Assembly (NCBI RefSeq): GCF_023055435.1
Contig: NW_025963891.1
Coordinates: 9,982,001-10,046,000, forward strand
DNA from: Haliotis rufescens
Taxonomy: Eukaryota
DNA length: 64,000 nucleotides
Direction: 5' to 3'
The number at the start of each line of letters is the position of its first letter. Within the stretch, counting starts at the first letter, position 1. The notes beneath the pieces were generated by a model, which had not been told where the DNA came from, searched no databases, and saw only the letters and a list, made by a program, of their open reading frames with translations. The translations under genes were made by a program, and so were the position numbers. Shown piece after piece: positions 8,267 to 35,728 of this stretch.

Positions 8267-8382
8267 TTAATTACAATTTGCAATTCGCTATTGTTTCAAA
8301 TGTATGCTGCACCACATAAGTGGTATCCAAAATGTCCACTAAAGAGAAAAAAAGACACGTGTCGATCATTGAATCCAATTAG

Positions 8383-8388
8383 TTTATT
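8383..8388 (-). terminator. Polyadenylation signal AATAAA of copy B (conserved in C, D, E)
   Basis: tttatt on the + strand, ~73 nt past the stop codon; present at the equivalent site in each unit. Confidence 0.6.
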
Positions 8389-8460
8389 TTTTAAAGAGAC
8401 ACATATACAAACAACTACTATGCTAATTCTAGTAGACGTTGATAATCTGGTCGATTCAAG

Positions 8461-11400
8461 TTACATCCGCCTCAAGAAAAGATTCTGAAAAATAGATAAG
8501 TCTTTAGTTGAGTCATGCAAGTGAATCAGTGCAAAAATGTATTACCTCATTGTAAACTTCTATAACTTAATATACAATAGCATAGGTCAGGATTGAGATA
8601 AAATTCATTCACAAGAAATATCATATTTAAGATAGTTCCTGATGATAAAGGCATTTTGTAAATGTGTTTATTGCTTTGATATGGCTCGAAGGGATTGATG
8701 CATACCTTGCTCAATGGTGATCATAACTTGTAGACTTAAGTATTTCATTAATATCTGAAAAATATATAAATGACATCAATTGCAGGACAAACTATCATAT
8801 CAAACCATTTCCTAAATATGTAGTCATAGTTGAATATGTCTAGTCATATGATGACAAACTTGATTACTGTAGTCTGAGACATTGATAATGGATAGCATGA
8901 TTGTTTGGCGTTAACATCACATAAAATCATTTATTGGGAGAAATGCTTTAATTCAGATCAGTTGTCTATATGATCATAATACAATTTTGTATATTTCTAA
9001 TGTTTTCTCATCTTGTTATTACAATTATGATTGTTTAGCATTCACATCACTTAAAATTATTTATTGGGAGTAATGCTTTAATTCAGATCAATTGCCTATA
9101 TTATTATAATACAATTTTCTATTTTTCTAATGTTTTTATCTTGTTCTTACAATGCTACCTTTTGAAGGAAGTCTGTCACCAGTGCAGTAGATGGCTTCCC
9201 TTTAAGATTCTCTGGGCATAATGTGGCGAGAGTGCAAAGGCCCTCGGGATCCTAAAGCATGAAAAAACGGTGGACTGCTCATGACGACTGGCATCAAGAT
9301 TACAACATTAAAAAATACTTCAGATTAAAAAAGAATAAAATAATATACTAATCTGTCTAACTGTTAGACCGAAATGTCAAACACACCCACGCACGCACGC
9401 ACGCACTCGAATTAGAAGTTGACAATTTGTTCATTTAAGCCCATGATAAAGTCATGATACCTGTGATATCCAATTCTTTTATGAATGGAATCGATAAACT
9501 GTAGAACGTTTTTCTTACCGCGTTTTCAACAATGTAATCCAGAACCCCGGGTATCAGAGCACGGACCTCAGCAGTACACTAAAACAAAGTAAAGAAGTCA
9601 GCAGTTGAATATTGTTTTAAAACAACTTTAACAACTACGTTGTGCATTATCAAATTAATTGGCATTCGCTACACATGCATTTATACGTGTTATGGAAGTC
9701 TTGCATCATTTCGTTTCAGAGCAAGTTATTTCTAAGAAGACAAAAGAACTAATGCAAACCAATATGTGTGGCTGAAACAATATGTGTGTCCAGGTATCAT
9801 GTAGCCACTGTTTGTTTAAGAAGAAGCAACAACACGTTTATTCAGGGACTACAACGATCTTAGCTGCTTAAGATTGGTCCGGACCAATTGTAAGTTTCGA
9901 TTGTAACTTACAACGATCTTAGCCTACAATCGCTTTGTGCAAGTGGATGACGATTGTAGCCGAAGCCAAAGATCGCGATCTTAAGGATTTTTAATAATTG
10001 TAGCGCTAAGATCGCTTTGTGCAAGTGGACCCAGGTATCCTATAGCCACTGTATGTTTAAGAAGAAGCAACAACATTAACATGATAGCCAATGTGTTTGA
10101 CTGAAATACGTATTTCAATAGAAAGAAGAGTGGAACATAAGAACAAATAGGTAAACACTTACGACTTCCTCCAGAAAATAAGCAGAAAGTGGACTGCAAA
10201 TTACATGGTCGAAATACGTCTCCACTTGTTCCTGCACAATACATTAGACACACTTGTCATTTAGGGCCTAATCCAACAACAACATTAGTAATGATTGCTT
10301 ATTTGAATTATAAACGTTGACATGTGCCCTGTGCGATATTTGGACATGTTGTCTCGGTAACTATTTGCGATGGTATACACAAAGTTTATCAGACCAACAA
10401 CGTGTCAAGCTAATTCGATTAAAATGCAATTTATGGACAGTAAGTAGGTACAAAAACTTATTCACGCTAATTCAATATGAGCGTTTTACCTTCACTTCAT
10501 CTGTGTTCAAACTCGCAATGAAATTATCAACGACTTCAATGCAGTTTGCACAAGCATCATCACCCTGGAAGAAAACAGAACCATTTTGTTTATGTTTATT
10601 AATTGTACATAAGTTGGGTTTAATCACACAATGACTCGTCGACTATTGCGCACACAGAATAAACAATCACTGTTTTTAGTCAATGACAGGTACACCAATG
10701 ACTCACTCATCGAGGTCAACATAAATAGCTATACATAGATGTGTTGTGAGTATCTCTTAAACCCTGATCTATGTTTCACGGGGGTTCAAATGTCACATCT
10801 TTGGTTTGTCAAAAGCATCGCTGTGCCATTGGTGCTAATTACTATCTGTGACATTCGTCCAACTTTAATATAACTGACATACAGTTTAAAGCGGGAATAA
10901 ATCCAACACATTCACACAAGTCATTACCGTTTGTACATCGACATTTGTAACCATCTTGAAGTGATTATTAAGCTCTTCAGGACACAACATTGCCAAACTG
11001 CACAAGACCTCAGGATCCTGAAACATATAGAATTAAATATTTTAAATTTACATTTTTAGTTTCTTTATCTTACATTAATATTTATATTCTTCCTGCTCTT
11101 CAGACGACTTCTGTTTGTAGTTTATAATTAATCACTTTCACATGTTACATACAATGATAAATAGGCCATCATGTCTCCCCTGACTTACCGCGTTCTCCAC
11201 AACATACTCCAGAAGACCTGGAACAAGCCCATGAACAGCAGAGTTACACTAAAACAAGAAGATACAATGGTAAGACTCGTGACATAATGACAATACAGTA
11301 TTCCATTGATATTGTCCTAAGTACATGTAAAGCCAAAATCCTACCTCTGTCAGGCGATTAGTCTCCAAGTCATCGTTTACATATTTTTTGCTCTACCTCA

Positions 11401-13364
11401 TTGATAACATCTATGAACAATGTTGGGGAAACATTTAGGAAAGAAGTAGGCATTCCCAAAGGCACCAATTGTGATCCCCTTCTTCCTGATCTGTTTCTTT
11501 ATGCATATGAATCAGTTGGTGAGTCAGTTGGTGAGTGAGTTCGGTTTAATATCGCTTTTAACATTATTCCAGTTATATCACGGCGTGTCAGCTTAATCCG
11601 GGAGGAGAGCCCGGAGTGATGTAGGTCTCAGACGTTTACCACTTCGATGACACCCACGAGCACGGGTATGGTGCTGACAAATCTAGAAATATAATCGGGG
11701 CGACCTGGGATTCCAACCTTCAATCATAGGTTTCTGGTGTGCCCAAGAGACGCAACTCTGCACAGCGAATCGCGGCGCCCCCCGCCCCCCATATAGGGAC
11801 ATTTCCAAACTTGACGCATGAATGACAAAAATGAAGTCCAATGCAATTCCCAATTTTGACTTGCACAATATGTTCACGTGCGTTTCAGGTGAACAATTGA
11901 CTTGCCCTTGCATGTGTTTGTAACGGGTGCCACAGATGGGGCAGGATACGCTCACCTTTTCTCGAACACCTGGTATCATCTCTAAATGATTGTGATTCTT
12001 AAACACTAGTTCATGATATATTCGAAAGATTTCTTATGAATAAGGAATGAGTTTTTCTTGGCATAAGTCTACTACTTCATGGTTCAACAATTTCCATTCT
12101 ACCATTATCACAACATTTACTTACAGTTTCTGTTAGAAAGTATGAGGATAGATGAGAACATATTTCATCCTTTAGGAATTGTTCCACCATCTCCTGAAAT
12201 ACAAAAAACATGGTTTCAGTTGTTGCCCTTAAGCTTTTGCAGAGGCTTTGCAAGTTATTTATTTCACACAATAATGCCAACTGATGAACATTTAAGTGTG
12301 TGAGTTGTGTTTTACGCCACTTTTAGCAATATCAAGGCGATAGACACCAGAAATGAGTTTCACACATTGTACCCAAGTAGGGATTCGGACGGCGAACGCG
12401 TTAACCTCTAGCCTTCCACCTTTTTAGACGTTTTCTCGTTAGTGAATATAACTGAACTCGTTTTTCATAGTTGAACTAAATTCGTGTTCATGCTTTATCA
12501 TGGAAGGATTCAACGGATGCACAATTATTACTTTATTCCCTTCTCATCAAACCCCGTTATCAACGTAGGCAATTGTGAAATTGGAAAAGGGAAGAAGTTC
12601 CTTTTCATATGTCTTGCAAGTTGAATTGCCTTTCCGACATTATGTCACTGCAAGTCCCACAAGCCACTTAGCGAACAAGGGATCGACGTCAGCGATTCGA
12701 ATCTACAACTGACAGATCTACAAAGCAAACATCATCTTCATAGAAGACTTTTCAAACCCATGCTCCCGTATTTCGAAGCAATGCAGTAATATACAACTGA
12801 AAGTCGTATATTAAATGCCAATAAATAGAACTGTTCGTTTATTTGACAAGCAGGAAGTAGGCACTGCTCAATCAATTTCTAATTTATTCAAGTTACATGA
12901 CTCACCACGCCTTCATCTGTATCCAATCTGGCAATTACCGCGGTGAGTGTTTCCTTACAGTTCGTACACGCATCGTCATCCTTTGAAATGATGCAGAAGA
13001 AACCCACTAGTATCATATCATATGTGAAACGGATTTTTTCTCTTATTAGCAGTTCATTTTGTACTGAACACTGACATTGAAAATAGATATAACGATTACA
13101 ACACACACACGTTTATAAGTTTTGCATATATAGTTGTCAGGTGAGAAGATATTTTACCTCCGTTGATGATGTTACTAGTTGTCTTATATTCCAGTTATTA
13201 GGCAGCGATATAGCTGAAACAAATATGGAGTTTATAAGTCAAATGTGTATGAGTTGGTAAAATAGCCCGTGCACAAATATACAAAGGTTGACATATAATC
13301 AACCAACCAATTTACCTGACCCAACGGAGACACAAAGGGCAATAATGAGAATCGAAGTATTCAT
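8461..13364 (-). CDS. Secreted two-SapB-domain saposin-like protein, copy B, 11 exons, 239 aa
   Basis: Manual splice, all GT-AG: 13364-13316, 13213-13158, 12980-12906, 12193-12125, 11248-11189, 11017-10928, 10564-10490, 10231-10163, 9578-9519, 9251-9159, 8484-8461. Protein: MNTSILIIALCVSVGSA ISLPNNWNIRQLVTSSTE DDDACTNCKETLTAVIARLDTDEGV EMVEQFLKDEICSHLSSYFLTET CNSAVHGLVPGLLEYVVENA DPEVLCSLAMLCPEELNNHFKMVTNVDVQT GDDACANCIEVVDNFIASLNTDEVK EQVETYFDHVICSPLSAYFLEEV CTAEVRALIPGVLDYIVENA DPEGLCTLATLCPENLKGKPSTALVTDFLQK NLFLRRM*. Two complete six-Cys saposin patterns (CxxC...C...C...PxxxCxxxxxC), an upstream TATA box and a downstream AATAAA. Confidence 0.9.
9843..10034. mobile_element. MITE fragment with gatcttag/ctaagatc subrepeats in intron 8 (present in all four units)
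   Basis: Repeated, partly palindromic motifs ending cgctttgtgcaagtggacccag, flanked by a ~45-bp direct duplication (ccaggtatc...agaagaagcaacaaca). Confidence 0.5.
11395..11513 (+). mobile_element. Shorter PLE RT remnant in intron 4 (also ~22990-23112 and ~34100-34222)
   Basis: YLIDNIY...VGIPKGTNCDPLLPDLFLYAYES; homologous to 45500-45600 and cut off at the SINE insertion point. Confidence 0.75.
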
Positions 13365-13431
13365 TTTCGGGGATGAACGTTAACACGACGTTGATGTCAA
13401 GTCAGACTGTTTGATGCAAACGCCATGGAGG

Positions 13432-13439
13432 TTTATATA
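13432..13439 (-). promoter_or_regulatory. TATA box (TATATAAA) of saposin-like copy B
   Basis: 68 bp upstream of the ATG at 13364. Confidence 0.7.
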
Positions 13440-16400
13440 CTCAAGCTAGGGTGACAGCATGTGCAACTCGACACTAATTAATTTTCCCATATGTCTTTTA
13501 ATGGGTGCGTTTGGCAATTTTGAAGAGATCATTACCCTTTTTAGTTGGTGCTAATAACGCCAATTGCCTGGTTAAAAGTGTCAGACATGTAAAACTGATA
13601 TAGTCAACATGCCTATTCCAATATGCTTAACAACATGTGTTTCGCAATAGCCATCATGTGTATATCGATATTGGCACCCCTTTACATTATATTCTTCATA
13701 ATTTATTTTTAATGCATCAGTTTCTTGTCGTGATGAATAACAATACTATTTATTGCCAAGGACATAATGTCGGCGGTCGTATTTTAAGAGTAAGGTAATG
13801 TGTAATGTGTTCAATTCTGATTTGGAAGCTGCGATAATGAGAGACATTAGAAATTTAACAGAATTCAAAACATCTATGACAGAGAATAATCAGTTTCACA
13901 TTTCTACCGAAAACATAAGGTGTAACAGCTAAAATAATGATGAATATTACATGTATGCAATCGACTATAGACCAGACACTCCAGTGATTGATATTATGAG
14001 CAGTGAGCCACGTCGTCGGGGTACGACGCCAGGCTGTCAACCAAGACAACAAGCCTGACCATCCGTCCCTATTAAAGTAAGTGCCAGCAGGTGTGAGATT
14101 TTCTACTTTAATATGTATTGTATTTCATCCTTACCTAATCTGAAAGTACTATGTTTTTACTCTGACGATTGCAAACTATGACGTCATCATAAGGAGAAAT
14201 GACAAAGTTCAGCTTTTCTTGTTTGAAGATGTTCACGATTGAATATGCCTGTGAGATAACAGAACATTAAGCCCCACTACCAATTAGATGTACACATATC
14301 AAAATGGCATTAAATTTTGAAAGAAATGGCTGAATAATGGACATAAATTTCAGATTTCAGCGTTGTCAGAGTTGAAAGATCAAATAAAGGTCAGAACCTA
14401 ATACATGGCAAAAGCGAACACACATGTTGAACCCCACTACTAACTACATACATACATACATACCAAATTTCGTTTGAGTAATAGCCAGAAATAGGTTTTC
14501 CAATATGATTTGCGTAGTGGCCATATTGAAATCGGATTTCAACCTTTCCTTTAGATTCAGGTGGCATCATTTGTTGGAAGTTTCAACTTCATTGGCCCAG
14601 TGGATTCTGAAGAAATTATGTTTGTATTGGTAGGAAATGCAATTTGAGAGAATTTGGGAGCATGGTCAAAGGGATGAAAACATATATTATTATTAAAAAA
14701 GGAACACATATATGTTGAGTCCTGCAACCTTGTTGAGTACCATGTTTTATTACATTTTGTCCAGATTTCCCACAAGCCCTTACAGCTTTCATTGTAGTCA
14801 GCCCATGATGGAAACAAATACAACAACTCGCACACAAAAAAAGGAAGTTTATGTTGATGCACCCTACTACCAGCTTCCCATGCACCATCATTCATTCCAT
14901 TTTAAACATAATGGCTAACTGACGAAATAACGCATGGCGCCTGACGGACAAACACTCCTCTGTTTAAAATATGTCGCAAATATCCAACCATTCACGTGAA
15001 CTACGTCCTAGGCGTCTTTATTATTGTGTGTATAGCGAGGATTGTATATACGGAAATGGGCGGAGATGATTTCATTTACCAAACTGTTATTCTTGCACTT
15101 TTGACTTACAGTAATGTAACGTTTCGAGATCAAACTGAGCATCGCTTCATGTCGTTCTAAATGCTTCTTATGCTGGGCCAACAGATAAGGTTGGACAGCA
15201 CTGACACTGATACTATCTGGAAACTGTTAATTCTATTCCTTGTTGTTTCAATATCATAATTGTATCGTGAAAGACTTAAATATGAATTTATTACATGATG
15301 TTTATTATCATTTAATTTAATTCACTACAGAACGCCTTCATTGTTCTTGAAATGACGTTTAACCAAAGTGGTCAACGTGTGACACATCAAACTGACACTC
15401 CTTGTGGATCGATGCTCATGATGTCAATCACTGGATTGTCTGGTCCAGACGCGATTGTTTAGAGACTGCCATCATACAGCTGGAATAATGCTGAGTGCGG
15501 AGTTACACAACAAACAAACAAAAAACAGAGTCATCGCGAAAAACACTTAAGTTGGTGTGTAATAAAAAACATCAATCACGAATCATAAGGACGAACTTCT
15601 GAAATGCTGAAAACTCCTGCGCTTCTCAATAACTCTTTTATCTATTAGTGTGAATTCATATTTCTCCCTGGATGTTTTATCTTAAACTGCCTGAATACTT
15701 TGCGTTCATGCCAACATCCTTTCCTACAGTGTACGTGATCACTGTTGGGTGACCAATACAACAGAAAATGTCTTTCCACTAATGCAAACGTAACTGCCAT
15801 ATACACTTTAATAGAATAGAGCAACAAAAACATGTATGTGATCTAGATTTCAAGTGTGGGTGTGCAAGTGACGGTGGTTCAGAGNNNNNNNNNNNNNNNN
15901 NNNNNNNNNNNNNNNNNNNNNNNNNNNNNNNNNNNNNNNNNNNNNNNNNNNNNNNNNNNNNNNNNNNNNNNNNNNNNNNNNNNNNNNNNNNNNNNNNNNN
16001 NNNNNNNNNNNNNNNNNNNNNNNNNNNNNNNNNNNNNNNNNNNNNNNNNNNNAATTGAGTCTGGGCCAGACAATCTAGTGATTTGTATCATGAACATCGA
16101 TCCACTTAATGTGGGATACGATATGACGCATCAACCAAGTCAGTGAGCCTGACCTCCTGATCCCGTTAGTCGCCTCTTTCGACAAGCATAGTCTCCTCTT
16201 ACGACATGGGTTGCTGAAGATCTGTTCTAACCCGTATCTTCACGGCGGATTCCAAAACTATGTATATCATCGTCATATTAGTGATAGACAATTTCCTTTA
16301 GTTGGTATGGCCTTGTGCTAGTATGGCAGTAAGCCCACTGAGATGCCATGCTGCAGTATAAAATGTCTCCCTACTCAAAAACAGTATACTGACTAAGCGG

Positions 16401-19400: not shown

Positions 19401-19945
19401 TTCCACCCATATTAACCAAGTAGAAAAACGGCGTCTGATATGGCGACACTGGCATGCCCCCAACACAATATGAGTCCTGGCCAGGGTCCTCTAGTATCCA
19501 GGAAGGTGCAACCCTTATGGGAGTAGACTTTTGGAGTCCATTTGACCTGTTTATATTTTGTCTTTTTTAGATGTATGTGTCAGTGCAACCAATATCCATC
19601 CAATACCCAACCAAAAATCAACAATATTTCAACATTGATATCTGATGTCCATTCAACGTCAATATTTCAAATCCAATCAAAGATCAATGTCATTTCAACG
19701 TTGAAGGACGGCATTGATTCAGCATTAATTCAACATTATTGTGACTGCTGGGTTAATTACAATTTGCAATTCGCTATTGTTTCAAATGTATGCTGCACCA
19801 CATAAGTGGTATCCAAAATGTCCACTAAAGAGAAAAAAGACACTTGTCGATCATTTACTCCAATTAGTTTATTTTTTAAAGAGACACATATACAAACAAC
19901 TAATATGCTAATTCTAGTAGACGTTGATAATCTGGTCGATTCAAG

Positions 19946-20893
19946 TTACATCCGCCTCAAGAAAAGATTCTGAAAAATAGATAAGTCTTTAGTTGAGTCA
20001 TGCAAGTGAATCAGTGCAAAAATGTATTACGTCATTGTAAACTTCTATAACTTAATATACAATAGCATAGGTCAGGATTGAGATAAATTCATTCACAAGA
20101 AATATCATATTTAAGATAGTTCCTGATGATAAAGGCATTTTGTAAATGTGTTTATTGCTTTGATATGGCTCGAAGGGATTGATGCATACCTTGCTTAATG
20201 GTGATTCATAACTTGTAGACTTAACTATTTCATTAATATCTGAAAAAATAAAAATGACATCAATTGCAAGACAAACTATCATATCAAACCAGTTCCTAAA
20301 TATGGAGTCATAGTTCAATATGTCTAGTCATATGATGACAAACTTGATTACTGTAGTCTGAGACATTGATAATGGATAGCATGATTGTTTGGCATTAACA
20401 TCACATAAAATCATTTATTGGGAGAAATGCTTTAATTCAGATCAGTTGTCTATATGATCATAATACAATTTTGTATATTTCTAATGTTTTCTCATCTTGT
20501 TATTACAATTATGATTGTTTAGCATTCACATCACTTAAAATTATTTATTGGGAGTAATGCTTTAATTCAGATCAATTGTCTATATGATTATAATACAATT
20601 TTCTATTTTTCTAATGTTTTTTATCTTGTTCTTACAATGCTACCTTTTGAAGGAAGTCTGTCACCAGTGCAGTAGATGGCTTCCCTTTAAGATTCTCTGG
20701 GCATAATGTGGCGAGAGTGCAAAGGCCCTCGGGATCCTAAAGCATGAACAAACGGTGGACTGCTCATGACGATTGCCATCAAGATTACAACATTAAAAAA
20801 TACTTCAGATTAAAAAAAATAAAATAATATACTAATCTGTCTAACTGTACAATAGACCGAAATGTCAAACACACGCACGCACGCACGCACGCA

Positions 20894-20926
<33 letters not shown>

Positions 20927-23900
20927 CACCTTTCAAAACATACAAAGGATTTCTATAATTTTAAGCTTTTTTTATTTGGAATATCTACTGATGGAAATGT
21001 TTTAAGTAACATGTAGTTGTACCTCGAATTAGAAGTTGACAATTTGTTCATTTAAGCCCATGATAAAGTCATGTACCTGTGATATCCAATTCTTATATGA
21101 ATGGAATCGATAAACTGTAAAACGTTTTCCTTACCGCGTTTTCAACAATGTAATCCAGAACCCCGGGTATCAGAGCACGGACCTCAGCAGTACACTAAAA
21201 CAAAGTAAAGAAGTCAGCAGTTGAATATTGTTTTAAAACAACTTTAACAACTACGTTGTGCATTATCAAATTAATTGGCATTCGCTACACATGCATTTAT
21301 ACGTGTTATGGAAGTCTTGCATCATTTTGTTTCAGAGGAAGTTATTTCTAAGAAGACAAAAGAACTAATGCAAACAAATTTGTGTGGCTGAAACAATATG
21401 TGTGTCTAGGTATCATGTAGCCACTGTATGTTTAAGAAGAAGCAACAACAAGTTTATTCAGGGACTACAACGATCTTAGCTGCTTAAGATTGGTCCGGAC
21501 CAATTGTAAGTTTCGATTGTAACTTACAATGATCTTAGCCTACAATCGCTTTGTGCAAGTGGACGACGATTGTACCCGAAGCCAAAGATCGCGATCTTAA
21601 GGATTTATAATAATTGTAGCGCTAAGATCGCTTTGTGCAAGTGGAACCAGGTATTCTATAGCCACTGTATGTTTAAGAAGAAGCAACAACATTAACATGA
21701 TAGTCAATGTGTTTGACTGAAATACGTATTTCAATAGAAAGAAGAGTGGAACATAAGAACAAATAGGTAAACACTTACGACTTCCACCAGAAAATAAGCA
21801 GAAAGTGGACTGCAAATTACATGGTCGAAATACGTCTCCACTTGCTCCTGCACAATACATTAGACACACTTGTCATTTAGGGCCTAATCCAACAACAACA
21901 TTAGTAATGATTGCTTATTTGAATTATACACGTTGACATGTGCCCTGTGCGATAATTGGACATGTTGTCTCGGTAACTGTTTGCGATGGTATACACAAAG
22001 TTTATCAGACCAACAACATGTCAAGCTAATTCGATTAAAATGCAATTTATGGACAGTAAGGAAGTACAAAAACTTATTCACGCTAATTCAATATGAGCAT
22101 TTTACCTTCACTTCATCTGTGTTCAAACTCGCAATGAAACTATCAACGACTTCAATGCAGTTTGTACAAGAATCATCACCCTGGAAGAAAACACAACCCC
22201 TTTGTGTATGTTTATTAATTGTACATAAGTTAGGTTTAATCACACAATGAGTCGTCGACTATTGCGTATACAGAATAAACAATCACTGTTTTTAGTCAAT
22301 GACAGGTACACCAATGACCCACTCATCGAGGTCAACATAAATAGCTATACATAGATGTGTTGTGAGTATCTCTTAAACCCTGATCTATGTTTCACGGGGG
22401 TTCAAATGTCAGATCTTTGGTTTGTCAAAAGCATCGCTGTGCCATTGGTGCTAATTACTATCTGTGACATTCGTCCAACTTTAATATAACTGACATACAG
22501 TTAAAAGCGGGAATAAATCCAACACATTCACACAAGTCATTACCGTTTGTACATCGACATTTGTAACCATCTTAAAGTGATTATTAAGCTTCTCAGGACA
22601 CAACATTGCCAAACTGCACAAGACCTCAGGATCCTGAAACATATAGAATTAAATATTTTAAATTTACATTTTTAGTTTCTTTATCTTACATTAATATTTA
22701 TATTCTTCCTGCTCTTCAGATGATTTCTGTTTGTAGTTTATAATTAATCACTTTCACGTGTTACATACAATGATAAATAGGCCATCATGTCTCCCCTGAC
22801 TTACCGCGTTCTCCACAACATACTCCAGAAGAACAGCAGAGTTACACTAAAACAAGAAGATACAATGGTAAGACTCGTGACATAATGGCAATACAGTATT
22901 CCATTGATATTGTCCTAAGAACATGTAAAGCCAAAATCCTACCTCTGTCAGGCGATTAGTCTCCAAGTCATCGTTTACATAGTTTTTGTACTACCTCATT
23001 GATAACATCTATGAACAATGTTGGGGAAATATTTTAGGAAAGAAGTAGGCATTCCCAAAGGCACCAATTGTGAGCCCCTTCTTGCTGATCTGTTTCTTTA
23101 TGCATATGAATCAGTGAGTGAGTGAGTGAGTGAGTTCGGTTTAACATCGCTTTTAACATTATTCCAGTTATATCACGGCGTGTCAGCTTAATGTGGGAGG
23201 AAAGCTCGAAGTGATGTAGGTCTCAGACGTTTACCACTTCGGTGAAACCCACGAGCACGGGTATGGTGCTGACAAATCTAGAAATCTGATCGGGACGAGC
23301 CGGGATTCGAACCTTCAATCATAGGTTTCTGGCGTGCCCAAGGGACGCATCTCTGCACATCGAATCGCGGCGACTTAGACGACTGGGCCACCCGACTACT
23401 TTTTTTCAGAGATTTCTTATGAATATGGAAATAGCTTTTCTTGGCATACGTCTACTATTTAATGGTTCAACAATTTCCATTCTACCATCATCACAACATT
23501 TACTTACAGTTTCTGTGAGGAGGTATGAGGATAGATGAGAACATATTTCATCCTTTAGGAATTGTTCTGCCATCTCCTGAAATACAAACAAAGTTGCCCT
23601 TAAGCTGCCCACATTGTACCGAGGTAGGGATTCGGACGGCGAACGCGTTAACCTCTAGCCTTCCGCCTTTTTAGACGTTTTCTCGTTGGTGAATATAACT
23701 GAACTCGTTTTCATAGTTGAACTAAATTCGTGTTCATGCTTTATCATGGAAGGATTCAACGGCTGCACAATTATTACTTTATTCCCTTCTCATCAAACCC
23801 CGTCATCAACGTAGGCAATTGTGAAATTGGAAAAGGGAAGAAGTTCCTTTTCATATGTCTTGCAAGTTGATGTGCCTTTCCGAGATTATTTCACTGCAAG

Positions 23901-24609
23901 TCACACAAGCCACGTGGCGAACAATGGATCGACGCCAGCGATTCGAATCTACAATCGTCAGATTTACAAAGCAAACATCGCCTCTATAGAAGACTTTTGA
24001 AACCCATGCTGCCGTATTTCGAGGCAATGCAGTAATATACAACTGTAAGTCATTTTATTAAATGCCAATAAATAGAGCAGTTCATTTATTTGACAAGCAG
24101 GAAGTAGGCACTGCTCAATCGATTTCTAATTTATTCAAGTAGCATGACTTACCACGCCTTCATCTGTATCCGACCTGGCAATTACCGCGGTGAGGGTTTC
24201 CTTACAGCTCGTACACGCATCGTCATCCTTTGAAATGATGCAGAAGAAAACTACTAGTATCATATCATATGTGAAACGGTTTTTCTCTTATTAGCAGTTC
24301 ATTTTGTACTGAACACTGACTTTGAAAATAGAAATAACGATTGCAACACACACACGTTTATAAGTTTTGCATATATAGTTGTCAGGTGAGTAGAGAGTTT
24401 ACCTCCGTTGACGATGTTCCTAGTTGTCTTATATTACAGTTATTAGGCAGCGATATTGCTGAAACAAATATTGAGTTCATAAGTCAAATGTGTATGAGTT
24501 GGTAAAATATCCCGTGCACAAATATACAAAGGTTGACATATAATCAACCAACCAATTTACCTGACCCAACGGAGACACAAAGGGCAATAATGAGAATCGA
24601 AGTATTCAT
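19946..24609 (-). CDS. Secreted two-SapB-domain saposin-like protein, copy C, 233 aa (6-aa in-frame deletion in exon 5)
   Basis: Exons 24609-24561, 24458-24403, 24227-24153, 23576-23508, 22846-22805, 22633-22544, 22180-22106, 21847-21779, 21194-21135, 20736-20644, 19969-19946. Open frame, GT-AG sites kept, all 12 domain cysteines kept. Exon 5 is 42 nt instead of 60. Confidence 0.85.
23114..23398 (-). mobile_element. tRNA-derived SINE with V-domain-like core and (TCAC)n tail (also 34224-34517; 5'-truncated 11515-11778)
   Basis: Head GTAGTCGGGTGGCCCAGTCGTCTAAG (A box), GGTTCGAATCC (B box), GTGGGTTTC...TTTCCTCCCAC core, tail gccgtgatataactggaataatgttaaaagcgatgttaaac(tcac)n. Confidence 0.75.
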
Positions 24610-24676
24610 TTTCGGGGATGAACGTAAACACGACGTTGATGTCAAGTCAGACTGTTTGATGTAAACGCCATGGAGG

Positions 24677-24684
24677 TTTATATA
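24677..24684 (-). promoter_or_regulatory. TATA box of saposin-like copy C
   Basis: TATATAAA on the minus strand, 68 bp upstream of the ATG. Confidence 0.7.
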
Positions 24685-27600: not shown

Positions 27601-30600
27601 AAGCGGAAAAAACCCTTCGTTTATCCTCTTAATGCTAAATGCCAACAGGGTTACAACAAATATAATCTTTTAACGTATTTGGGTACGCCCCTGCAATGTT
27701 CTTGGAGAATGAGGATGTCAGCATCGATCTTCCCTTTTTGTTTGACAACCAGAGACTGTGAGGCATTAAGTGTATTTGCCTTCAGTAGCATTATTTCGAG
27801 AGTACATGATCGGTCGTTTCTGAAAAAGACATTGTATGTGATTTTTTATGCCCCTTCGTTTTTAACAGTCCATCTTTAAGAGTGTTGGTTGGGTCAACTG
27901 TGTAACAAACTATTATTCCAATGAAACCAAACACGTTTCCTTCATATCATTGCATGTGGAACACACACACCTACTTTGTTGATACCTGCATGAAATGCCT
28001 TTGTTGACTCGTGCTAGATTTGAGACTAAAGGAAACACCATTTACGGTAATTTAACTATATGCCTCGCAACGTGACTCAAGTTTCTTGAGAGAGAAACAA
28101 TGTCATGACATGGAAGAGTGTTTGCCATGATCTTTATTAACTGTACTATGACTTTAATAATGATCTTCACTCATGACGGGTTTTTTCCAGTGTGGTAGAG
28201 CATGTTCAGCCAATCACACACACCTGGTGTCGTCGCTGAAACCCTTTGTGATTAATACTTTTGAATTTGTTGCTTTCATACCTTTTTTACTTTGATTTAA
28301 ATAGTAAATGTCATAAGAAAAGGATTAACCAAGTCATAGCAGAGCGATGCTTCTTATTCATTTATATAACATTCCTACGTAAGATGAAGATTGGACAATT
28401 ATTGTTGTGTATAACTTTATATATGGATTCTCAGATACAGACTCAAAGGAGATTAATACAGAAAAAATGTATATCGAAACGTTTACGCATACGAATTACC
28501 AACGGATAGAGATGCTTGATAGACTGTTTACATTGAATTTGATTTCTTTCTTTTGTTATATCTGCTCTTTGTGTCTCTGACAATATTTAACCGTAATCTT
28601 ATAAAGTGTATGCTCTGCTCAAGTGTCGCAGTCATAATCTTTAAGCGAACCCTGTCCTCACACTTATATAGTTTAGGACAACTCGTTATACATTATATGA
28701 ATTTATGCAAGAATATGTGATTTGTGTTATATCCAGATAAAACATGATTTAACATTAACATTTAGGACAACTCGTTGTACATCATATGAATTTATGCAAG
28801 AATAAGTGATTTGTGTTACATATGTGTATACATATGCGTCTTTGCAGGAAGGGGGTGCCTCATTAGGTAACATCAGGGGTCACTGGAGGAACGGTGGCCC
28901 ATACCCGCCACTGGTGAGATCATTTCCCCCTGTATGCCTCTACATTTTATCTCGCGGCCACCAGATACTTCCACTGGTGAGATAAAATATAGAGGTATAC
29001 AGGGGAAAATGATCTCACCAGTGGAAGTATCTGGCGGCCGCCAGACAAAATATAGACGCATACAGTGAAAAATGATCTCACCAGTGGCGGGTCTGGACCA
29101 CCGTACTGGAGTCGTTATCATGGACTCAACTTTTTTTCACAAACGAATAAATATATAGACGAATACAATGCTATTTTTGGAAACGTTGACAATCAAAGTC
29201 CGATTCATTCACGTTACATCCGCAAGACGCTGAAAAGGATACGCCTCCAGTTGAATATGTCAGGCTTGGATATTAGGATATTAAAGTTATTATCTTTCTG
29301 TCAATATTGCACTGGATTATAATAGTTTCCAAGATTTGTAACGTTTAATATACATAAATGATTATCTTTATTGCGCTGTTTAACGGTGATTCAGAACCCG
29401 TGGTATTTCATTAACAGCTGAAAACAGAATTCCCTCTTTGTTCAGTCATGGTTGAATATGTATAGCCAGAATACTGAAAGCGTTTACTGAAATATCAGTA
29501 GAATATACGAATGTGGTATAGATGTCTTAGAAAGATCAAGGGATTTTTTTTAGCCTTAGCATGTGTCCATATCTTTTGCAAAAAATCCAGTCAACAATAC
29601 ATCGGATGGCTTCCCTTTAACATTCTCTGGACATAACGTGTATAGAGTGCACATAGACTGGTAACGAGGACTGGCACCCAAAATTAATAGAATGGGATAA
29701 AATGCTTGTATTGTCTGTAATGTGCAGGGAGTGAGACAGCCTCATCTGTTTCATCTTATCAAAACTGATCCTCAGATGCAATTCCCAATTGCGAATTGGG
29801 CCAAATGTTCCCGTTTTTCTTCAGGTGAATATCTGGCATGTGTTTGTCGCGGGTAGAACGGATTCAGAAGGATATGCTGCATTAACGTATGTCACTAAAT
29901 GTACGGGGTGATAAATATTACATTCCAAATCACTTCCCTCGTATTGAGTGACACCCCATTGCTTTTCCGTAGTGCATTACCCAGCAGCCACAAAACATTG
30001 TTCTGTTGAAATTTGGTTGATCTGAGGCTGCTACGTTCAAAAACATTGTATTGACATTGTTTCAACATTGGCCTTTCGATAGTTGAAAACATGTTGAATC
30101 TGATATTGTTTCAACATTGAAGAGTAATCTAAAAACGATGATATCTCAGAAAACAATGAATTCTGCAATACTTAATTAAAAATTTATATTTTTTGTCGTT
30201 GGAATCAATATATCTAGACTCTAGATTGTATGTTTTGTACCACATAATGATGATATAAAGACGTATTACATATCATAAATATAGATAAACATTTGGTTTA
30301 ACAATGCTAATACAGATATTTTATATACTTTCGTGAGACATAGAAAGTATTACCGACATACAGTGATTTACTTTACCGAAACTGCCAGGACATCTCGCAT
30401 TTCAACTGAACATTCCGGCGTGTATTTGGACATTGTAACCTCAGATAATTTAACCATAGAACGACCGAGTGATGTCAAATGAAACAAACATGCACACTGT
30501 ATGAACGCGCGATTTTTTTCCAAACAAAGGAGGTGATGCTGGTATATGACAGATCAAAAGTGACACTGGATTCTCTCAAAATGCAGCATTCCACCCATAT

Positions 30601-31131
30601 TAACCAAGTAGAAAAACGGCGTATGATATGGCGACACTGGCATGCCCCCAACACAATATGAGTCCTGGCAAGGGTCCTCTAGTATCCAGGAAGGTGCAAC
30701 CCTTATTGGAGTAGACTTTTGGAGTCCATTTGACCTGTTTATATTGTCTTTTTTAGATGTATGTGTCAGTGCAACCAATATCCATCCAATACCCAACCAA
30801 AAATCAACAATATTTCAACATTGATATCTGATGTCCATTCAACGTCAATATTTCAAATCCAATCAAAGATCAATGTCATTTCAACGTTGAAGGACGGCAT
30901 TGATTCAACATTAATTCAACATTATTGTGACTGCTGGGTTAATTACAATTTGCAATTCGCTATTGTTTCAAATGTATGCTGCACCACATAAGTGGTATCC
31001 AAAATGTCCACTAAAGAGAAAAAAGACACTTGTCGATCATTTACTCCAATTAGTTTATTTTTTAAAGAGACACATATACAAACAACTACTATGCTAATTC
31101 TAGTAGACGTTGATAATCTGGTCGATTCAAG

Positions 31132-31979
31132 TTACATCCGCCTCAAGAACAGATTCTGAAAAATAGATAAGTCTTTAGTTGAGTCATGCAAGTGAATCAG
31201 TGCAAAAATGTATTACGTCATTGTAAACTTCTATAACTTAATATACAATAGCATAGGTCAGGATTGAGATAAAATTCATTCACAAGAAATATCATATTTA
31301 AGATAGTTCCTGATGATAAAGGCATTTTGTAAATGTGTTTATTGCTTTGATATGGCTCGAAGGGATTGATGCATACCTTGCTTAATGGTGATTCATAACT
31401 TGTAGACTTAACTATTTCATTAATATCTGAAAAAATAAAAATGACATCAATTGCAGGACAAACTATCATATCAAACCATTTCCTAAATATGTAGTCATAG
31501 TTCAATATGTCTAGTCATATGATGACAAACTTGATTCCTGTAGTCTGAGACATTGATAATGGATAGCATGATTGTTTGGCGTTAACATCACATAAAAGCA
31601 TTTATTGGGAGAAATGCTTTTATTCAGATCAATTGTCTGTATGATTATAATACAATTTTCTATATTTCTAATGTTTTTTATCTTGTTCTTACAATGCTAC
31701 CTTTTGAAGGAAGTCTGTCACCAGTGCAGTAGATGGCTTCCCTTTAACATTCTCTGGGCATAATGTGGCGAGAGTGCAAAGGCCCTCGGGATCCTAAAGC
31801 ATGAAAAAACGGTGGACTGCTCATGACGACTGGCATCAAGATTACAACATTTAAAAATACTTCAGATTAAAAAAGAATAAAATAATATACTAATCTGTCT
31901 AACTGTACAATAGACCGAAATGTCAAACACACGCACGCACGCACGCACGCACGCATTCACACACACACATACACACACA

Positions 31980-32018
<39 letters not shown>

Positions 32019-35000
32019 CACCTTTCAAAACATACAAATGATTTCTATAATTTTAATCTTTTTGTATTTGGAATATCTACTGATGGAAATGTTTTAAGTA
32101 ACATGTAGTTGTACCTCGAATTAGAAGTTGACAATTTGTTCATTTAAGCCCATGATAAAGTCATGATACCTGTGATATCCAATTCTTATATGAATGGAAT
32201 CGATAAACTGTAAAACGTTTTTCTTACCGCGTTTTCAACAATGTAATCCAGAACCCCGGGTATCAGAGCACGGACCTCAGCAGTACACTAAAACAAAGTA
32301 AAGAAGTCAGCAGTTGAATATTGTTTTAAAACAACTTTAACAACTACGTTGTGCATTATCAAATTAATTGGCATTCGCTACACATGCATTTATACGTGTT
32401 ATGGAAGTCTTGCATCATTTCGTTTCACAGCAAGTTATTTCTAAGAAGACAAAAGAAATAATGCAAACCAATATGTGTGGCTGAAACAATATGTGTGTCC
32501 AGGTATCATGTAGCCACTGTATGTTTAAGAAGAAGCAACAACAAGTTTATTCAGGGACTACAACGATCTTAGCTGCTTAAGATTGGTCCGGACCAATTGT
32601 AAGTTTCGATTGTAACTTACAATGATCTTAGCCTACAATCGTTTTGTGCAAGTGGACGACGATTGTACCCGAAGCCAAAGATCGCGATCTTAAGGATTTA
32701 TAATAATTGTAGCGCTAAGATCGCTTTGTGCAAGTGGAACCAGGTATGCTATAGCCACTGTATGTTTAAGAAGAAGCAACAACATTAACATGATAGTCAA
32801 TGTGTTTGACTGAAATACGTATTTCAATAGTAAGAAGAGTGGAACATAAGAACAAATAGGTAAACACTTACGACTTCCTCCAGAAAATAAGCAGAAAGTG
32901 GACTGCAAATTACATGGTCGAAATACGTCTCCACTTCCTCCTGCATAATACATTAGACACACTTGTCATTTAGGGCCTAATCCAACAACAACATTAGTAA
33001 TGATTGCTTATTTGAATTATACACGTTGACATGTGCCCTGTGCGATAATTGGACATGTTGTCTCGGTAACTGTTTGCGATGGTATACACAAAGTTTATCA
33101 GACCAACAACTTGTCAAGCTAATTCGATTAAAATGCAATTTATGGACAGTAAGGAGGTACAAAAACTTATTCACGCTAATTCAATATGAGCGTTTTACCT
33201 TCACTTCATCTGTGTTCAAACTCGCAATGAAACTATCAACGACTTCAATGCAGTTTGTACAAGAATCATCACCCTGGAAGAAAACAGAACCCCTTTGTGT
33301 ATGTTTTTTAATTGTACATAAGTTGGGTTTAATCACACAATGACTCGTCGACTATTGCGCATACAGAATAAACAATCACTGTTTTTAGTCAATGACAGGT
33401 ACACCAATGACTCACTCATCGAGGTCAACATAAATAGCTATACAGAGATGTGTTGTGAGTATCTCTTAAACCCTGATCTATGTTTCACGGGGGTTCAAAT
33501 GTCAGATCTTTGGTTTGTCAAAAGCATCGCTGTGCCATTGGTGCTAATTACTATCTGTGACATTCGTCCAACTTTAATATAACTGACATACAGTTTAAAG
33601 CGGGAATAAATCCAACACATTCACACAAGTCATTACCGTTTGTACATCGGCATTTGTAACCATCTTGAAGTGATTATTAAGCTTCTCAGGACACAACATT
33701 GCCAAACTGCACAAGACCTCAGGATCCTGAAACATATAGAATTAAATATTTTAAATTTACACTTTTAGTTTCTTTATCTTACATTAATATTTATATTCTT
33801 CCTGCTCTTCAGACGATTTCTGTTTGTAGTTTATAATTACTCACTTTCACGTGTTACATACAATGATAAATAGGCCATCATGTCTCCCCTGACTTACCGC
33901 GTTCTCCACAACATACTCCAGAAGACCTGGAACAAGCCCATGAACAGCAGAGTTACACTAAAACAAGAAGATACAATGGTAAGACTCGTGACATAATGGC
34001 AATACAGTATTCCATTCATATTGTCCTAAGTACATGTAAAGCCAAAATCCTACCTCTGTCAGGCGATTAGTCTCCAAGTCATCGTTTACATATTTTTTGC
34101 ACTACCTCATTGATAACATCTATGAACAATGTTGGGGAAATATTTTAGGAAAGAAGTAGGCATTCCCAAAGGCACCAATTGTGAGCCCCTTCTTGCTGAT
34201 GTGTTTCTTTATGCATATGAATCAGTGAGTGAGTGAGTGAGTGAGTGAGTGAGTTCGGTTTAACATCGCTTTTAACATTATTCCAGTTATATCACGGCGT
34301 GTCAGCTTAATCCGGGAGGAAAGCTCGAAGTGATGTAGGTCTCAGACGTTTACTACTTCGGTGAAACCCACGAGCACGGGTATGGTGCTGACAAATCTAG
34401 AAATCTGATCGGGACGAGCCGGGATTCGAACCTTCATTCATAGGTTTCTGGCGTGCCCAAGGGACGCATCTCTGCACATCGAATCGCGGCGACTTCGACG
34501 ATTGGGCCACCCGACTACTTTTTTCAGAGATTTCTTATGAATATGGAAAGAGTTTTTCTTGGCATAAGTCTACTATTTCATGGTTCAACAATTTCCATTC
34601 TACCATCATCACAACATTTACTTACAGTTTCTGTGAGGAGGTATGAGGATAGATGAGAACATATTTCATCCTTTAGGAATTGTTCTACCATCTCCTGAAA
34701 TACAAACAAAGTTGCCCTTAAGCTGCCCACATTGTACCGAGGTAGGGATTCGGACGGCGAACGCGTTAACCTCTAGCCTTCCACCTTTTTAGACGTTTTC
34801 TCGTTAGTGAATCTAACTGAACTCGTTTTCATAGTTGAACTAAATTCGTGTTCATGCTTTATCATGGAAGGATTCAACGGCTGCACAATTATTACTTTAT
34901 TCCCTTCTCATCAAACCCCGTCATCAACGTAGGCAATTGTGAAATTGGAAAAGGGAAGAAGTTCCTTTTCATATGTCTTGCAAGTTGATGTGCCTTTCCG

Positions 35001-35728
35001 AGATTATTTCACTGCAAGTCCCACAAGCCACGTGGCGAACAATGGATCGACGTCAGCGATTCGAATCTACAATCGTCAGATTTACAAAGCAAACATCGCC
35101 TCTATAGAAGACTTTTGAAACCCATGCTCCCGTATTTCGAGGCAATGCAGTAATATACAACTACAAGTCATTTTATTAAATGCCAATAAATAGAGCAGTT
35201 CATTTATTTGACAAGCAGGAAGTAGGCACTGCTCAATCGATTTCTAATTTATTCAAGTACCATGACTCACCACGCCTTCATCTGTATCCAATCTGGCAAT
35301 TACCGCGTTGAGGGTTTCCTTACAGTTCGTACACGCATCGTCATCCTTTGAAATGATGCAGAAGAAACCCACTAGTATCATATCATATGTGAAACGGTTT
35401 TTTCTCTTATTAGCAGTTCATTTTGTACTGCACACTGACTTTGAAAATAGAAATAACGATTACAACACACACACGTTTATAAGTTTTGCATATATAGTTG
35501 TCAGGTGAGTAGAGAGTTTACCTCCGTTGACGATGTTCCTAGTTGTCTTATATTCCAGTTATTAGGCAGCGATATAGCTGAAACAAATATGGAGTTTATA
35601 AGTCAAATGTGTATGAGTTGGTAAAATATCCCGTGCACAAATATACAAAGGTTGACATATAATCAACCAACCAATTTACCTGACCCAACGGAGACACAAA
35701 GGGCAATAATGAGAATCGAAGTATTCAT
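31132..35728 (-). CDS. Secreted two-SapB-domain saposin-like protein, copy D, 239 aa
   Basis: Exons 35728-35680, 35577-35522, 35345-35271, 34694-34626, 33957-33898, 33726-33637, 33273-33199, 32940-32872, 32287-32228, 31793-31701, 31155-31132. Open frame, GT-AG, exon lengths identical to copy B. Confidence 0.9.
31927..32016 (+). repeat. (CACG)n(CA)n microsatellite in intron 9 (also 20868-20923, 9381-9406; N-gap at 43287-43456)
   Basis: Seen directly; length varies among units. Confidence 0.9.

What the first reader, a model, noticed from the sequence alone, without database searches (positions are those of the whole stretch)
8461..35728. Hidden tandem family of secreted, acidic two-domain saposin-like proteins
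Seen: 11 short exons splice with GT-AG sites into an uninterrupted 239-aa (233-aa in copy C) ORF with a signal peptide, a short pro-segment and two full six-cysteine SapB domains. Three copies are intact and two are broken. Established: prosaposin has four SapB plus SapA domains, and NK-lysin/granulysin-type antimicrobial SAPLIPs are cationic. Here there are two SapB domains, no SapA, no N-x-S/T sequon after helix 1 (LDTDE/LNTDE), and the domains are strongly Asp/Glu-rich. Inference: a lineage-specific, dosage-amplified SAPLIP family, perhaps a low-pH lipid-binding or pore-forming factor in digestion, mucus or immunity, or a Ca-binding secretory protein. I cannot tell whether it has been described.
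Basis: partly seen in the sequence, partly recalled or inferred. Interest (0 to 1): 0.85.

Follow-up and report, generated by a model that had tools for sequence, protein, structure and literature searches.

The report
Abalone tandem acidic double-saposin genes
The window holds a recent tandem array of red-abalone genes for a small, secreted, very acidic protein made of two saposin-like lipid-binding domains; the genes are real and transcribed, but RefSeq already lists them as uncharacterized proteins and nobody has studied them.

Summary
An ~11.3-kb unit is repeated in tandem from about 600 to 45600. It carries three intact minus-strand genes (A 13364-8456, B 24609-20225, C 35728-31412) and two partial, stop-bearing end copies (0: 640-1625; D: 42206-45347).

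RNA-like contigs from three organism labels show 10 GT-AG junctions of copy A. A DNA run shows none of them. The true model has 12 coding exons, not 11.

These models match RefSeq XP_048256965.1, XP_048256664.1 and XP_046354164.2 ("uncharacterized protein", Haliotis rufescens) letter for letter. The genes are therefore not hidden. The assembly gap at 15885-16052 lies in the spacer, 2.5 kb from any exon.

Each domain has the saposin cysteine spacing 2-28-11-24-5. A family profile matches solved saposin C and the proSP-B N-terminal domain (E about 1e-4). Pfam SapB_2 only just passes, and SapB_1 and SapA do not match. The pI is 4.05. That is unlike NK-lysin but ordinary for lysosomal saposins.

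Relatives were found only in Haliotis. Function is untested. My best guess is an acid-active, secreted lipid-binding or membrane-perturbing factor.

The scan had already reported this array, and a neighbouring one, from overlapping windows.

The parts
13316..13364 (-). Copy A exon 1: ATG and signal peptide
   Evidence: ATG at 13364 and GT donor after 13316. The joined model equals RefSeq P0015. This exon lay outside the stretch used for read laying.
13158..13213 (-). Copy A exon 2: pro-segment
   Evidence: AG/GT sites. The junction 12979->13157 is seen in X1 and X2 contigs.
12906..12980 (-). Copy A exon 3: domain 1, helix 1 (Cys1, Cys2)
   Evidence: Junctions 12192->12905 and 12979->13157; 75 nt, phase 0.
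12125..12193 (-). Copy A exon 4: domain 1, helix 2 (Cys3)
   Evidence: Junctions 11248->12125 and 12192->12905.
11189..11248 (-). Copy A exon 5: domain 1, helix 3 (Cys4)
   Evidence: Junctions 11016->11188 and 11248->12125.
10928..11017 (-). Copy A exon 6: domain 1, helix 4 (Cys5, Cys6) and linker
   Evidence: Junctions 10563->10927 and 11016->11188.
10490..10564 (-). Copy A exon 7: domain 2, helix 1
   Evidence: Junctions 10230->10489 and 10563->10927.
10163..10231 (-). Copy A exon 8: domain 2, helix 2. RefSeq isoform X2 of copies B and C skips the equivalent exon.
   Evidence: Junctions 9578->10163 and 10230->10489. Removing this exon from models B and C gives P0009 and P0017 exactly.
9519..9578 (-). 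Copy A exon 9: domain 2, helix 3
   Evidence: Junctions 9250->9518 and 9578->10163.
9159..9251 (-). Copy A exon 10: domain 2, helix 4 and start of the tail
   Evidence: Junctions 8754->9159 and 9250->9518. This exon was the query that retrieved P0001.
8706..8754 (-). It is open in copies A and D and carries a TAG in B and C.
   Evidence: Junction 8754->9159 in X1, X2 and X6. The 8486->8721 joint has 14 unaligned letters that match the B/C form of this exon.
8374..8484 (-). Copy A exon 12: last 8 codons plus the last two bases of a codon begun in exon 11, TGA at 8458-8456, and 3' UTR with AATAAA at 8388
   Evidence: RNA contigs cover 8374-8486; sequence.
19940..24609 (-). Copy B gene (230 aa; LOC124133713). 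Exons: 24609-24561, 24458-24403, 24227-24153, 23576-23508, 22846-22805, 22633-22544, 22180-22106, 21847-21779, 21194-21135, 20736-20644, 20239-20190, 19969-. It has an 18-nt in-frame deletion in exon 5 and a TAG at 20227-20225.
   Evidence: The model is identical to P0001 = XP_048256664.1.
31126..35728 (-). Copy C gene (236 aa; LOC124133717). Exons: 35728-35680, 35577-35522, 35345-35271, 34694-34626, 33957-33898, 33726-33637, 33273-33199, 32940-32872, 32287-32228, 31793-31701, 31426-31377, 31155-. It has a TAG at 31414-31412.
   Evidence: The model is identical to P0014 = XP_046354164.2.
640..1625 (-). Copy 0: 5' fragment with exons 1-4 only, and a TAA in exon 2 at 1422-1420
   Evidence: No exons 5-12 in the 20 kb upstream. 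Homology to copy A stops near 601, inside intron 4.
42206..45347 (-). Copy D: 3' fragment with exons 5-12 only, and a TAA in exon 6 at 45009-45007
   Evidence: Homology stops at about 45600, inside intron 4.
15885..16052 (.). Assembly gap in the spacer between copies A and B
   Evidence: an N run, with flanks colinear to the next unit. It is 2.5 kb from the nearest exon and was not filled.
43287..43456 (.). Assembly gap inside the exon 9-exon 10 intron of partial copy D
6915..7070 (-). Relic exon-10-like piece. One occurs per unit; the others are at 18384-18539, 29574-29726 and 40704-40790.
   Evidence: Local tblastn, 51% identity over 55 aligned positions, E 9e-10; own-genome search, 57-69% identity.

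Best explanation
This is a recently amplified, Haliotis-restricted subfamily of saposin-like (SAPLIP) genes.

Shown: each intact gene has 12 short exons. Exon 1 encodes a signal-type hydrophobic N-terminus and exon 2 a 19-aa pro-segment. Two four-exon, all-phase-0 cassettes follow, each encoding one six-cysteine saposin B-type domain. The gene ends in a short, poorly conserved tail. The genes are transcribed and spliced.

Inferred mechanism: the protein enters the secretory pathway and the signal peptide is removed after residue 16 or 17. Each domain folds into a helical saposin bundle locked by three disulfides. There is no N-glycan sequon and no SapA domain, so the usual prosaposin routes to the lysosome are lacking. 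The protein is therefore probably released into an extracellular or luminal acidic compartment, such as the gut or digestive-gland lumen, or mucus. At low pH its many Asp and Glu residues (net charge -13 to -15 per domain) become protonated, which would let the domains open and bind or extract membrane lipids. In that state it would act as a lipid solubiliser or hydrolase cofactor, or as a membrane-perturbing factor against ingested or invading cells, as acidic gut SAPLIPs of other invertebrates do.

The array grew by tandem duplication within the H. rufescens lineage, or has been homogenised since.
For: Gene and transcript:
- Junctions with GT..AG ends appear in contigs of X1, X2 and X6 and are absent from DNA run X8.
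- My models are letter-for-letter identical to RefSeq proteins P0015, P0001 and P0014.

SAPLIP identity:
- Both domains have the cysteine spacing 2-28-11-24-5.
- All 12 Cys are invariant in 9 Haliotis sequences.
- The family profile matches the proSP-B N-terminal saposin domain 6vyn (E 5e-5) and saposin C 2qyp (E 1e-4) over whole domains.
- Pfam SapB_2 scores 21.6 and 22.5 bits against a cut-off of 21.
- The nearest ESM Atlas clusters are all two-domain SapB proteins.
- The top Foldseek and VIA-align rows are all SAPLIPs: Z 6.4-7.6, with 75-80 residues aligned, spanning whole chains (or, for acid sphingomyelinase 5i81, its saposin domain).

Secreted and not lysosome-targeted: hydrophobic N-terminus, no sequon outside it, and no SapA hit at E<=1.

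Acidity: pI 4.05.

Recent amplification:
- Introns differ by 2.2-3.5% between copies.
- The H. rufescens copies group together in the tree, with support 80/96.

Constraint: dN/dS is 0.31-0.42 for A against B or C.
Against: - I could reach no tissue, protein-level or functional data. Run identities are coded, and contig depth cannot rank expression.
- Pfam SapB_1 does not match at all. SapB_2 is only marginal, and below the cut-off in copy B.
- Both AlphaFold models are poor (pLDDT 48.7 and 46.0), so the fold evidence is weak on its own.
- Signal-peptide cleavage is inferred by eye; no predictor was available.
- B against C gives dN/dS 0.88 on only 12 differences. Copy B also lacks six residues of helix 3 in domain 1, so some copies may be decaying.
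- Strongly anionic domains are not what classical membrane-lytic SAPLIPs look like.
Confidence: 0.55

Rival explanations
1. It is an innate-immune antimicrobial effector: a pore-forming SAPLIP like amoebapores, caenopores or NK-lysin. It would be secreted by haemocytes or epithelia, and its copy number would be driven by host-pathogen conflict.
For: - Tandem, lineage-specific amplification with copies clustering by species.
- Variable tails and copy-to-copy amino-acid changes, with dN/dS up to 0.88.
- The best PDB sequence match is the proSP-B N-terminal saposin domain. From memory, this domain is reported to be antibacterial at acidic pH.
Against: - Net charge of -13 to -15 per domain is the opposite of cationic NK-lysin and granulysin.
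- The protein has two domains, whereas classical effectors are single mature domains.
- No induction or expression data were available.
Confidence: 0.2
2. It is a short lysosomal prosaposin paralogue. It would be cleaved into two small sphingolipid activator peptides that present glycolipids to lysosomal hydrolases in digestive cells.
For: - The profile matches saposins C, D, A and B.
- An acidic pI is typical of lysosomal saposins (established knowledge).
- The 17-aa inter-domain linker resembles prosaposin linkers.
- A canonical multi-domain SAPLIP gene lies 175 kb away on the same contig.
Against: - No SapA domains and no N-glycosylation sequon, so the known sortilin and mannose-6-phosphate routes are not available.
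- Identity to the genome's canonical SapB domains is only about 29%, and the intron positions differ.
Confidence: 0.15
3. The array is mostly evolutionary debris. It would be a young segmental amplification whose copies are transcribed but are drifting toward pseudogenes, with no copy-specific function.
For: - Two of five copies are fragments with stops.
- Copy B has a 6-aa deletion in helix 3.
- The tails differ through a stop and a 1-nt indel.
- B against C gives dN/dS 0.88.
Against: - The family keeps all 12 Cys and the same architecture in H. cracherodii and in the distant H. asinina, at 64-67% identity.
- A against B or C gives dN/dS 0.31-0.42.
- Spliced contigs occur under three organism labels.
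Confidence: 0.1

Closest known systems
Prosaposin and saposins A-D (for example human saposin C, PDB 2qyp, 2z9a, 2gtg)
   Same: - Signal peptide followed by a precursor with tandem SapB-type domains joined by linkers.
- Identical six-cysteine spacing and an acidic pI.
- Whole-domain profile match at E 1e-4 to 1e-3.
   Different: - Two domains instead of four.
- No SapA domains, no N-glycosylation sequon, and Pfam SapB_1 is not detected.
- Four phase-0 exons per domain, whereas the canonical SAPLIP gene of this genome keeps helices 2-4 in one exon.
N-terminal saposin-like domain of pro-surfactant protein B (PDB 6vyn, 6w1b)
   Same: - The best sequence-profile hit (E 5e-5), aligned over residues 5-85 with all cysteines in register.
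- Among the top fold matches.
- A lipid-binding, open saposin conformation.
   Different: It is a vertebrate lung protein whose domain is part of a three-SAPLIP precursor. Identity is only 21-24%, and no orthology is implied.
Acidic gut or secretory SAPLIPs of invertebrates and protists (caenopores/SPP, amoebapores, hookworm Na-SLP-1 3s63, Fasciola SAPs)
   Same: - Small, secreted, non-lysosomal SAPLIPs, often in expanded gene families.
- Active or proposed to act at acidic pH in digestion or defence (from established knowledge).
- Na-SLP-1 appears among the Foldseek rows.
   Different: Those are mostly single-domain mature peptides. I showed no sequence-level relationship closer than the general SAPLIP level, and function and tissue are untested here.
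Neighbouring Haliotis 'double-saposin' array just upstream on the same contig (earlier scan notes s1-813580 and s1-818158)
   Same: - The same four-exon cassette with introns at the same positions, seen in the one cassette I read at L002:1670-2973.
- The same chromosomal cluster.
- The H. asinina gene models even fuse the two types.
   Different: - That cassette is Lys-rich, whereas ours is strongly acidic.
- It lies on the opposite strand (convergent orientation).
- It is too diverged to be picked up by exon-level searches with P0015.

Membership tests
SAPLIP / saposin B-type domain | Six cysteines spaced C-x2-C-x27/28-C-x10/11-C-x23-25-C-x5-C | tested here: met
   Both domains have spacing 2-28-11-24-5. 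All 12 Cys are invariant in 9 Haliotis sequences.
SAPLIP / saposin B-type domain | Pfam SapB_2 (PF03489) at or above the gathering score of 21 bits | tested here: met
   Copy A scores 21.6 bits and copy C 22.5 bits, which is only marginal. Copy B scores 18.1 and H. cracherodii 16.7, both below the cut-off. H. asinina scores 27.7.
SAPLIP / saposin B-type domain | Pfam SapB_1 (PF05184) at or above the gathering score | tested here: not met
   No SapB_1 hit at E<=1 for P0015, P0014, P0008 or P0010. There is also no six-frame hit in the window.
SAPLIP / saposin B-type domain | Sequence homology to solved saposin-fold proteins over the whole domain | tested here: met
   The profile of 5 Haliotis proteins matches 6vyn (5.4e-5), 2qyp (1.3e-4) and 2gtg (1e-3), and more weakly saposin D (5u85, E 0.03) and saposin A (2dob, E 0.075). 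Both domains are hit.
SAPLIP / saposin B-type domain | Four- to five-helix saposin fold | tested here: inconclusive
   The AF2 models are low-confidence (pLDDT 48.7 and 46.0). Even so, each domain has four predicted helices, and the 12 best VIA-align rows (Z 6.4-7.6, 75-80 residues aligned) and the 11 best Foldseek rows are all SAPLIPs.
Prosaposin (PSAP orthologue) | Four SapB domains flanked by SapA domains | tested here: not met
   There are two domains and no PF02199 hit at E<=1.
Prosaposin (PSAP orthologue) | Conserved N-glycosylation sequon in each saposin domain | tested here: not met
   The only N-x-S/T is N2-T-S, inside the signal peptide.
NK-lysin / granulysin-type antimicrobial SAPLIPs | Single, strongly cationic SapB domain | tested here: not met
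   There are two domains with net charge -15 and -13 and pI 4.05-4.06.
Amoebapore / caenopore-type pore formers | pH-dependent membrane permeabilisation by the mature domain | not testable with these tools
   This needs liposome-leakage or bactericidal assays.

The most novel reading that the evidence does not exclude
The acidic double-saposins of this array and the Lys-rich double-saposins of the convergent neighbouring array may form one Haliotis-specific system of charge-complementary secreted SAPLIPs. For example, an anionic partner could mask or deliver a cationic membrane-active partner until both reach an acidic or target compartment. The system would be built from a shuffle-ready four-exon, all-phase-0 saposin cassette. 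That would be a new mode of regulating SAPLIP activity in a mollusc.
Probability: 0.08. Interest if true: 0.6.

Novelty: new member of a known kind. Interest (0 to 1): 0.3.

Why it matters
SAPLIPs are a versatile toolkit for handling membrane lipids, used in lysosomal lipid breakdown, lung surfactant, and killing microbes or ingested cells. A Haliotis-restricted cluster of short, non-glycosylated, strongly acidic two-domain SAPLIPs is a plausible digestion or defence factor in a farmed and endangered group of molluscs. It is also a tidy example of a domain encoded by a symmetric, phase-0 exon cassette.

It is still a divergent member of a well-known superfamily. It is already present in public annotation and has no functional data, so its value lies in being a candidate for expression and biochemical work rather than in being a discovery of a new kind of system.

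Tried and rejected
- Exon-by-exon Pfam scan of the eight domain exons gave no SapB hit. The pieces are only 20-31 aa long.
- Six-frame SapB_1 and SapB_2 searches of the genome found canonical SAPLIP genes elsewhere but nothing in the window, because introns split the domains.
- The exhaustive HMMER search with exon 10 returned, besides the Haliotis proteins, five long repetitive proteins. The one named cluster among them is bacterial (Saprospiraceae) and the other four are unnamed environmental or genome sequences. I treat them as chance matches to the Cys/Pro motif.
- Rfam and tRNA scans of one unit found nothing.
- The literature holds no paper naming these loci. One H. discus hannai gonad study lists an ovary-biased 'SapB1' gene among digestive enzymes, but I could not link it to this family.
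- Two AlphaFold runs gave low-confidence models.
- The idea that the assembly gap breaks a gene is rejected. Both gaps are non-coding.
- No evidence bears on Ca binding. There is no EF-hand or other Ca-motif hit in Pfam.
- The joined spliced protein was never sent to a search, fold or complex tool.

Full report
**What is in the sequence**

Self-comparison shows a unit of 11.1-11.7 kb repeated head to tail from about position 600 to 45600, with copies 88-99% identical. There are two N runs, at 15885-16052 and 43287-43456.

The saposin-like reading frames lie on the minus strand. The window is G000:C113:9982001-10046000 of a 1.33-Gb genome. The proteins retrieved later name the organism as Haliotis rufescens, the red abalone.

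**Gene model and transcription**

I laid contigs of three RNA-like runs (X1, X2, X6, three different organism labels) and one DNA run (X8) on 8300-13300. This gave ten joints whose skipped parts end CT..AC on the plus strand, that is, GT..AG on the minus strand. None of them is present in the DNA run.

The joints define copy A's exons 2 to 12. Exon 1 (13364-13316, the ATG and a hydrophobic leader) lay just outside the laid stretch. I placed it from its GT donor and the open frame.

The model has 12 coding exons, and every intron is GT-AG. Leaving that exon out changes the frame of the last exon and gives exactly 239 aa, ending at 8461. The RNA contigs include the exon.

With it, copy A encodes 257 aa (stop TGA at 8458-8456). 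In copies B and C the same exon is 50 nt long and carries a TAG four codons in. They therefore encode 230 and 236 aa. Copy B also has an 18-nt in-frame deletion in exon 5 that removes six residues of helix 3 in domain 1.

**How the spliced model was handled**

I assembled the spliced models only inside local scripts, from window coordinates. I used them to test ORF continuity, to compute composition, and for local alignments of copy A's protein against the window and the two flanking loci. I did not send the joined protein to any database search, fold or complex tool.

Instead I searched single exons by reference. The exhaustive HMMER search with exon 10 (31 aa) returned a 230-aa protein, P0001. 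Cluster look-ups then gave P0015 (257 aa) and P0014 (236 aa). These three are letter-for-letter identical to my models of copies B, A and C. All later work used those public ids.

**The genes are already annotated**

- P0015 is XP_048256965.1 (LOC124133695).
- P0001 is XP_048256664.1 (LOC124133713, isoform X1).
- P0014 is XP_046354164.2 (LOC124133717, isoform X1).

All three are named "uncharacterized protein [Haliotis rufescens]". The X2 isoforms (P0009, P0017) equal my models with exon 8 removed.

Orthologues are named "prosaposin-like": three 238-aa proteins and a fragment in H. cracherodii, and proteins of 241, 423 and 561 aa in H. asinina. The two long H. asinina models look like run-on fusions of neighbouring units. 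No paper in the library names these loci.

**Copy census**

- Intact: A (13364-8456), B (24609-20225) and C (35728-31412).
- Copy 0 (640-1625) has exons 1-4 only, with a TAA in exon 2 at 1422-1420. Nothing resembling exons 5-12 lies in the 20 kb upstream.
- Copy D (42206-45347) has exons 5-12 only, with a TAA in exon 6 at 45009-45007.

So "three intact, two broken" is correct. An exon-level search of the whole genome with P0015 found matches only inside this array.

**The gaps**

Gap 15885-16052 is 2.5 kb upstream of copy A's ATG and about 3.9 kb beyond copy B's last exon. Its flanks align colinearly to the neighbouring unit. Gap 43287-43456 sits in the intron between exons 9 and 10 of fragment D. 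Neither affects a reading frame, and I did not fill either.

**What the protein is**

After a 16-17-residue hydrophobic leader and a 19-aa pro-segment come two domains of 98 and 99 aa. They are 51% identical to each other, and each has six cysteines spaced 2-28-11-24-5, the saposin B-type pattern. All twelve cysteines are invariant across nine Haliotis sequences.

Further evidence for a SAPLIP:

- A profile of the family matches solved SAPLIP structures over whole domains: the proSP-B N-terminal domain 6vyn (5.4e-5), saposin C 2qyp (1.3e-4) and 2gtg (1e-3), and more weakly saposins D and A (E 0.03-0.08). Both domains are hit.
- Pfam is only marginal. SapB_2 scores 21.6 bits (A) and 22.5 bits (C) against a cut-off of 21, and 18.1 bits in B. 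SapB_1 and SapA are not detected.
- The nearest ESM Atlas clusters are all two-domain SapB proteins of 205-236 aa from nematodes, plants and chordates (scores 0.86-0.88, which the tool rates as a lead only).
- AlphaFold models were poor (pLDDT 48.7 and 46.0). They do show four helices per domain. The best Foldseek rows (probability 0.97, E about 0.5) and the best VIA-align rows (Z 6.4-7.6, 75-80 residues aligned) are all SAPLIPs.

Together these make SAPLIP membership secure, as a divergent subfamily.

**Composition**

The pI is 4.05, with net charge -31 for the whole protein and -15 and -13 for the two domains. The only N-x-S/T sequon lies in the signal peptide.

The acidity separates the protein from cationic NK-lysin and granulysin. 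It does not separate it from lysosomal saposins, which are themselves acidic (established knowledge).

**Evolution**

- Introns of A, B and C differ by 2.2-3.5%.
- dN/dS is 0.31 (A-B), 0.42 (A-C) and 0.88 (B-C), the last on only 12 differences.
- The three H. rufescens proteins group together apart from the three H. cracherodii proteins (support 80/96). Identity is 95-96% within the species, 88-92% between the two species, and 64-67% to H. asinina.

This fits recent amplification or homogenisation within the lineage, on top of an older, conserved family. Three protein searches found relatives only in Haliotis. That holds only within the sensitivity of a word-indexed search.

**Relation to other SAPLIP genes in the genome**

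Canonical multi-domain SAPLIP genes lie 175 kb downstream on the same contig (C113:10221175-10236021) and on C13. Their domains are only about 29% identical to ours, and they keep helices 2-4 in one exon.

In contrast, a Lys-rich SapB-like cassette 7-8 kb before the window (L002:1670-2973, plus strand) has introns at the same positions as ours. This fits the earlier scan notes of a neighbouring double-saposin array.

**Function**

Nothing I could reach gives tissue, protein or activity data. Run identities are coded, and contig depth cannot rank expression.

My best reading is inferred, not shown. The protein is a secreted, non-lysosomally targeted SAPLIP whose anionic domains open and engage lipids when protonated at low pH. 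It would serve as a lipid solubiliser or hydrolase cofactor, or as a membrane-perturbing factor, in digestion or mucosal defence.

The rivals are a dedicated antimicrobial effector, a short lysosomal activator precursor, and partial decay of a young amplification.

**Verdict**

It is not hidden, and it is a divergent member of a well-known superfamily. The scan had already reached the same conclusion on overlapping windows.

Noticed in passing
window 6915-7070, 18384-18539, 29574-29726, 40704-40790 (minus strand): Each 11.3-kb unit carries a solitary, degenerate exon-10-like piece about 1.4 kb 3' of the gene (57-69% identical to exon 10). It looks like the remnant of an older gene copy.
   Followed up: partly
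window ~601 and ~45600: The array is bounded by complementary fragments: copy 0 has exons 1-4 and copy D has exons 5-12. Both homology breakpoints fall inside intron 4, as if the repeat unit were phased, or circularly permuted, within that intron. The intron also holds very high-copy repeats and an insertion specific to copy A at 11777-12027.
   Followed up: partly
window 49395-50582 and 59395-60594 (plus strand): Two intronless ORFs of 395 and 399 aa have Cys-loop ligand-gated ion-channel domains (Neur_chan_LBD 2.8e-41 and 7.5e-40, plus Neur_chan_memb). They sit in a second duplication of about 10 kb, 90-93% identical.
   Followed up: partly
L002:1670-2973 (+) = G000:C113:9973670-9974973: A Lys-rich SapB-like four-exon cassette has introns at the same positions as the acidic cassettes. 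It is homologous to the C-terminal part of the H. asinina 423-aa model P0003. The neighbouring family is therefore opposite in charge and convergent in orientation.
   Followed up: partly
G000:C113:10221175-10236021 (+) and G000:C13:27726281-27743748 (+): Canonical multi-domain SAPLIP genes with strong SapB_1 and SapB_2 hits. One lies only 175 kb from this array, and the C13 gene has at least ten SapB_1 units.
   Followed up: partly
window 9970-10136, 11473-11973, 12308-12474: Intron segments with contig depth thousands of times the background in every run, which marks interspersed repeats. ARAGORN and Rfam do not recognise them.
   Followed up: partly
P0003 and P0012 (H. asinina): The 423- and 561-aa 'prosaposin-like' RefSeq models contain partial extra cassettes and a cationic C-terminal domain. 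They are probably run-on fusions of adjacent array genes.
   Followed up: no
PMC11989308, Table 3: [quoted passage not shown] It sits in the table beside amylase, cellulase and mannanase, which suggests carry-over of digestive-gland tissue. Its relation to this family is unknown.
   Followed up: no
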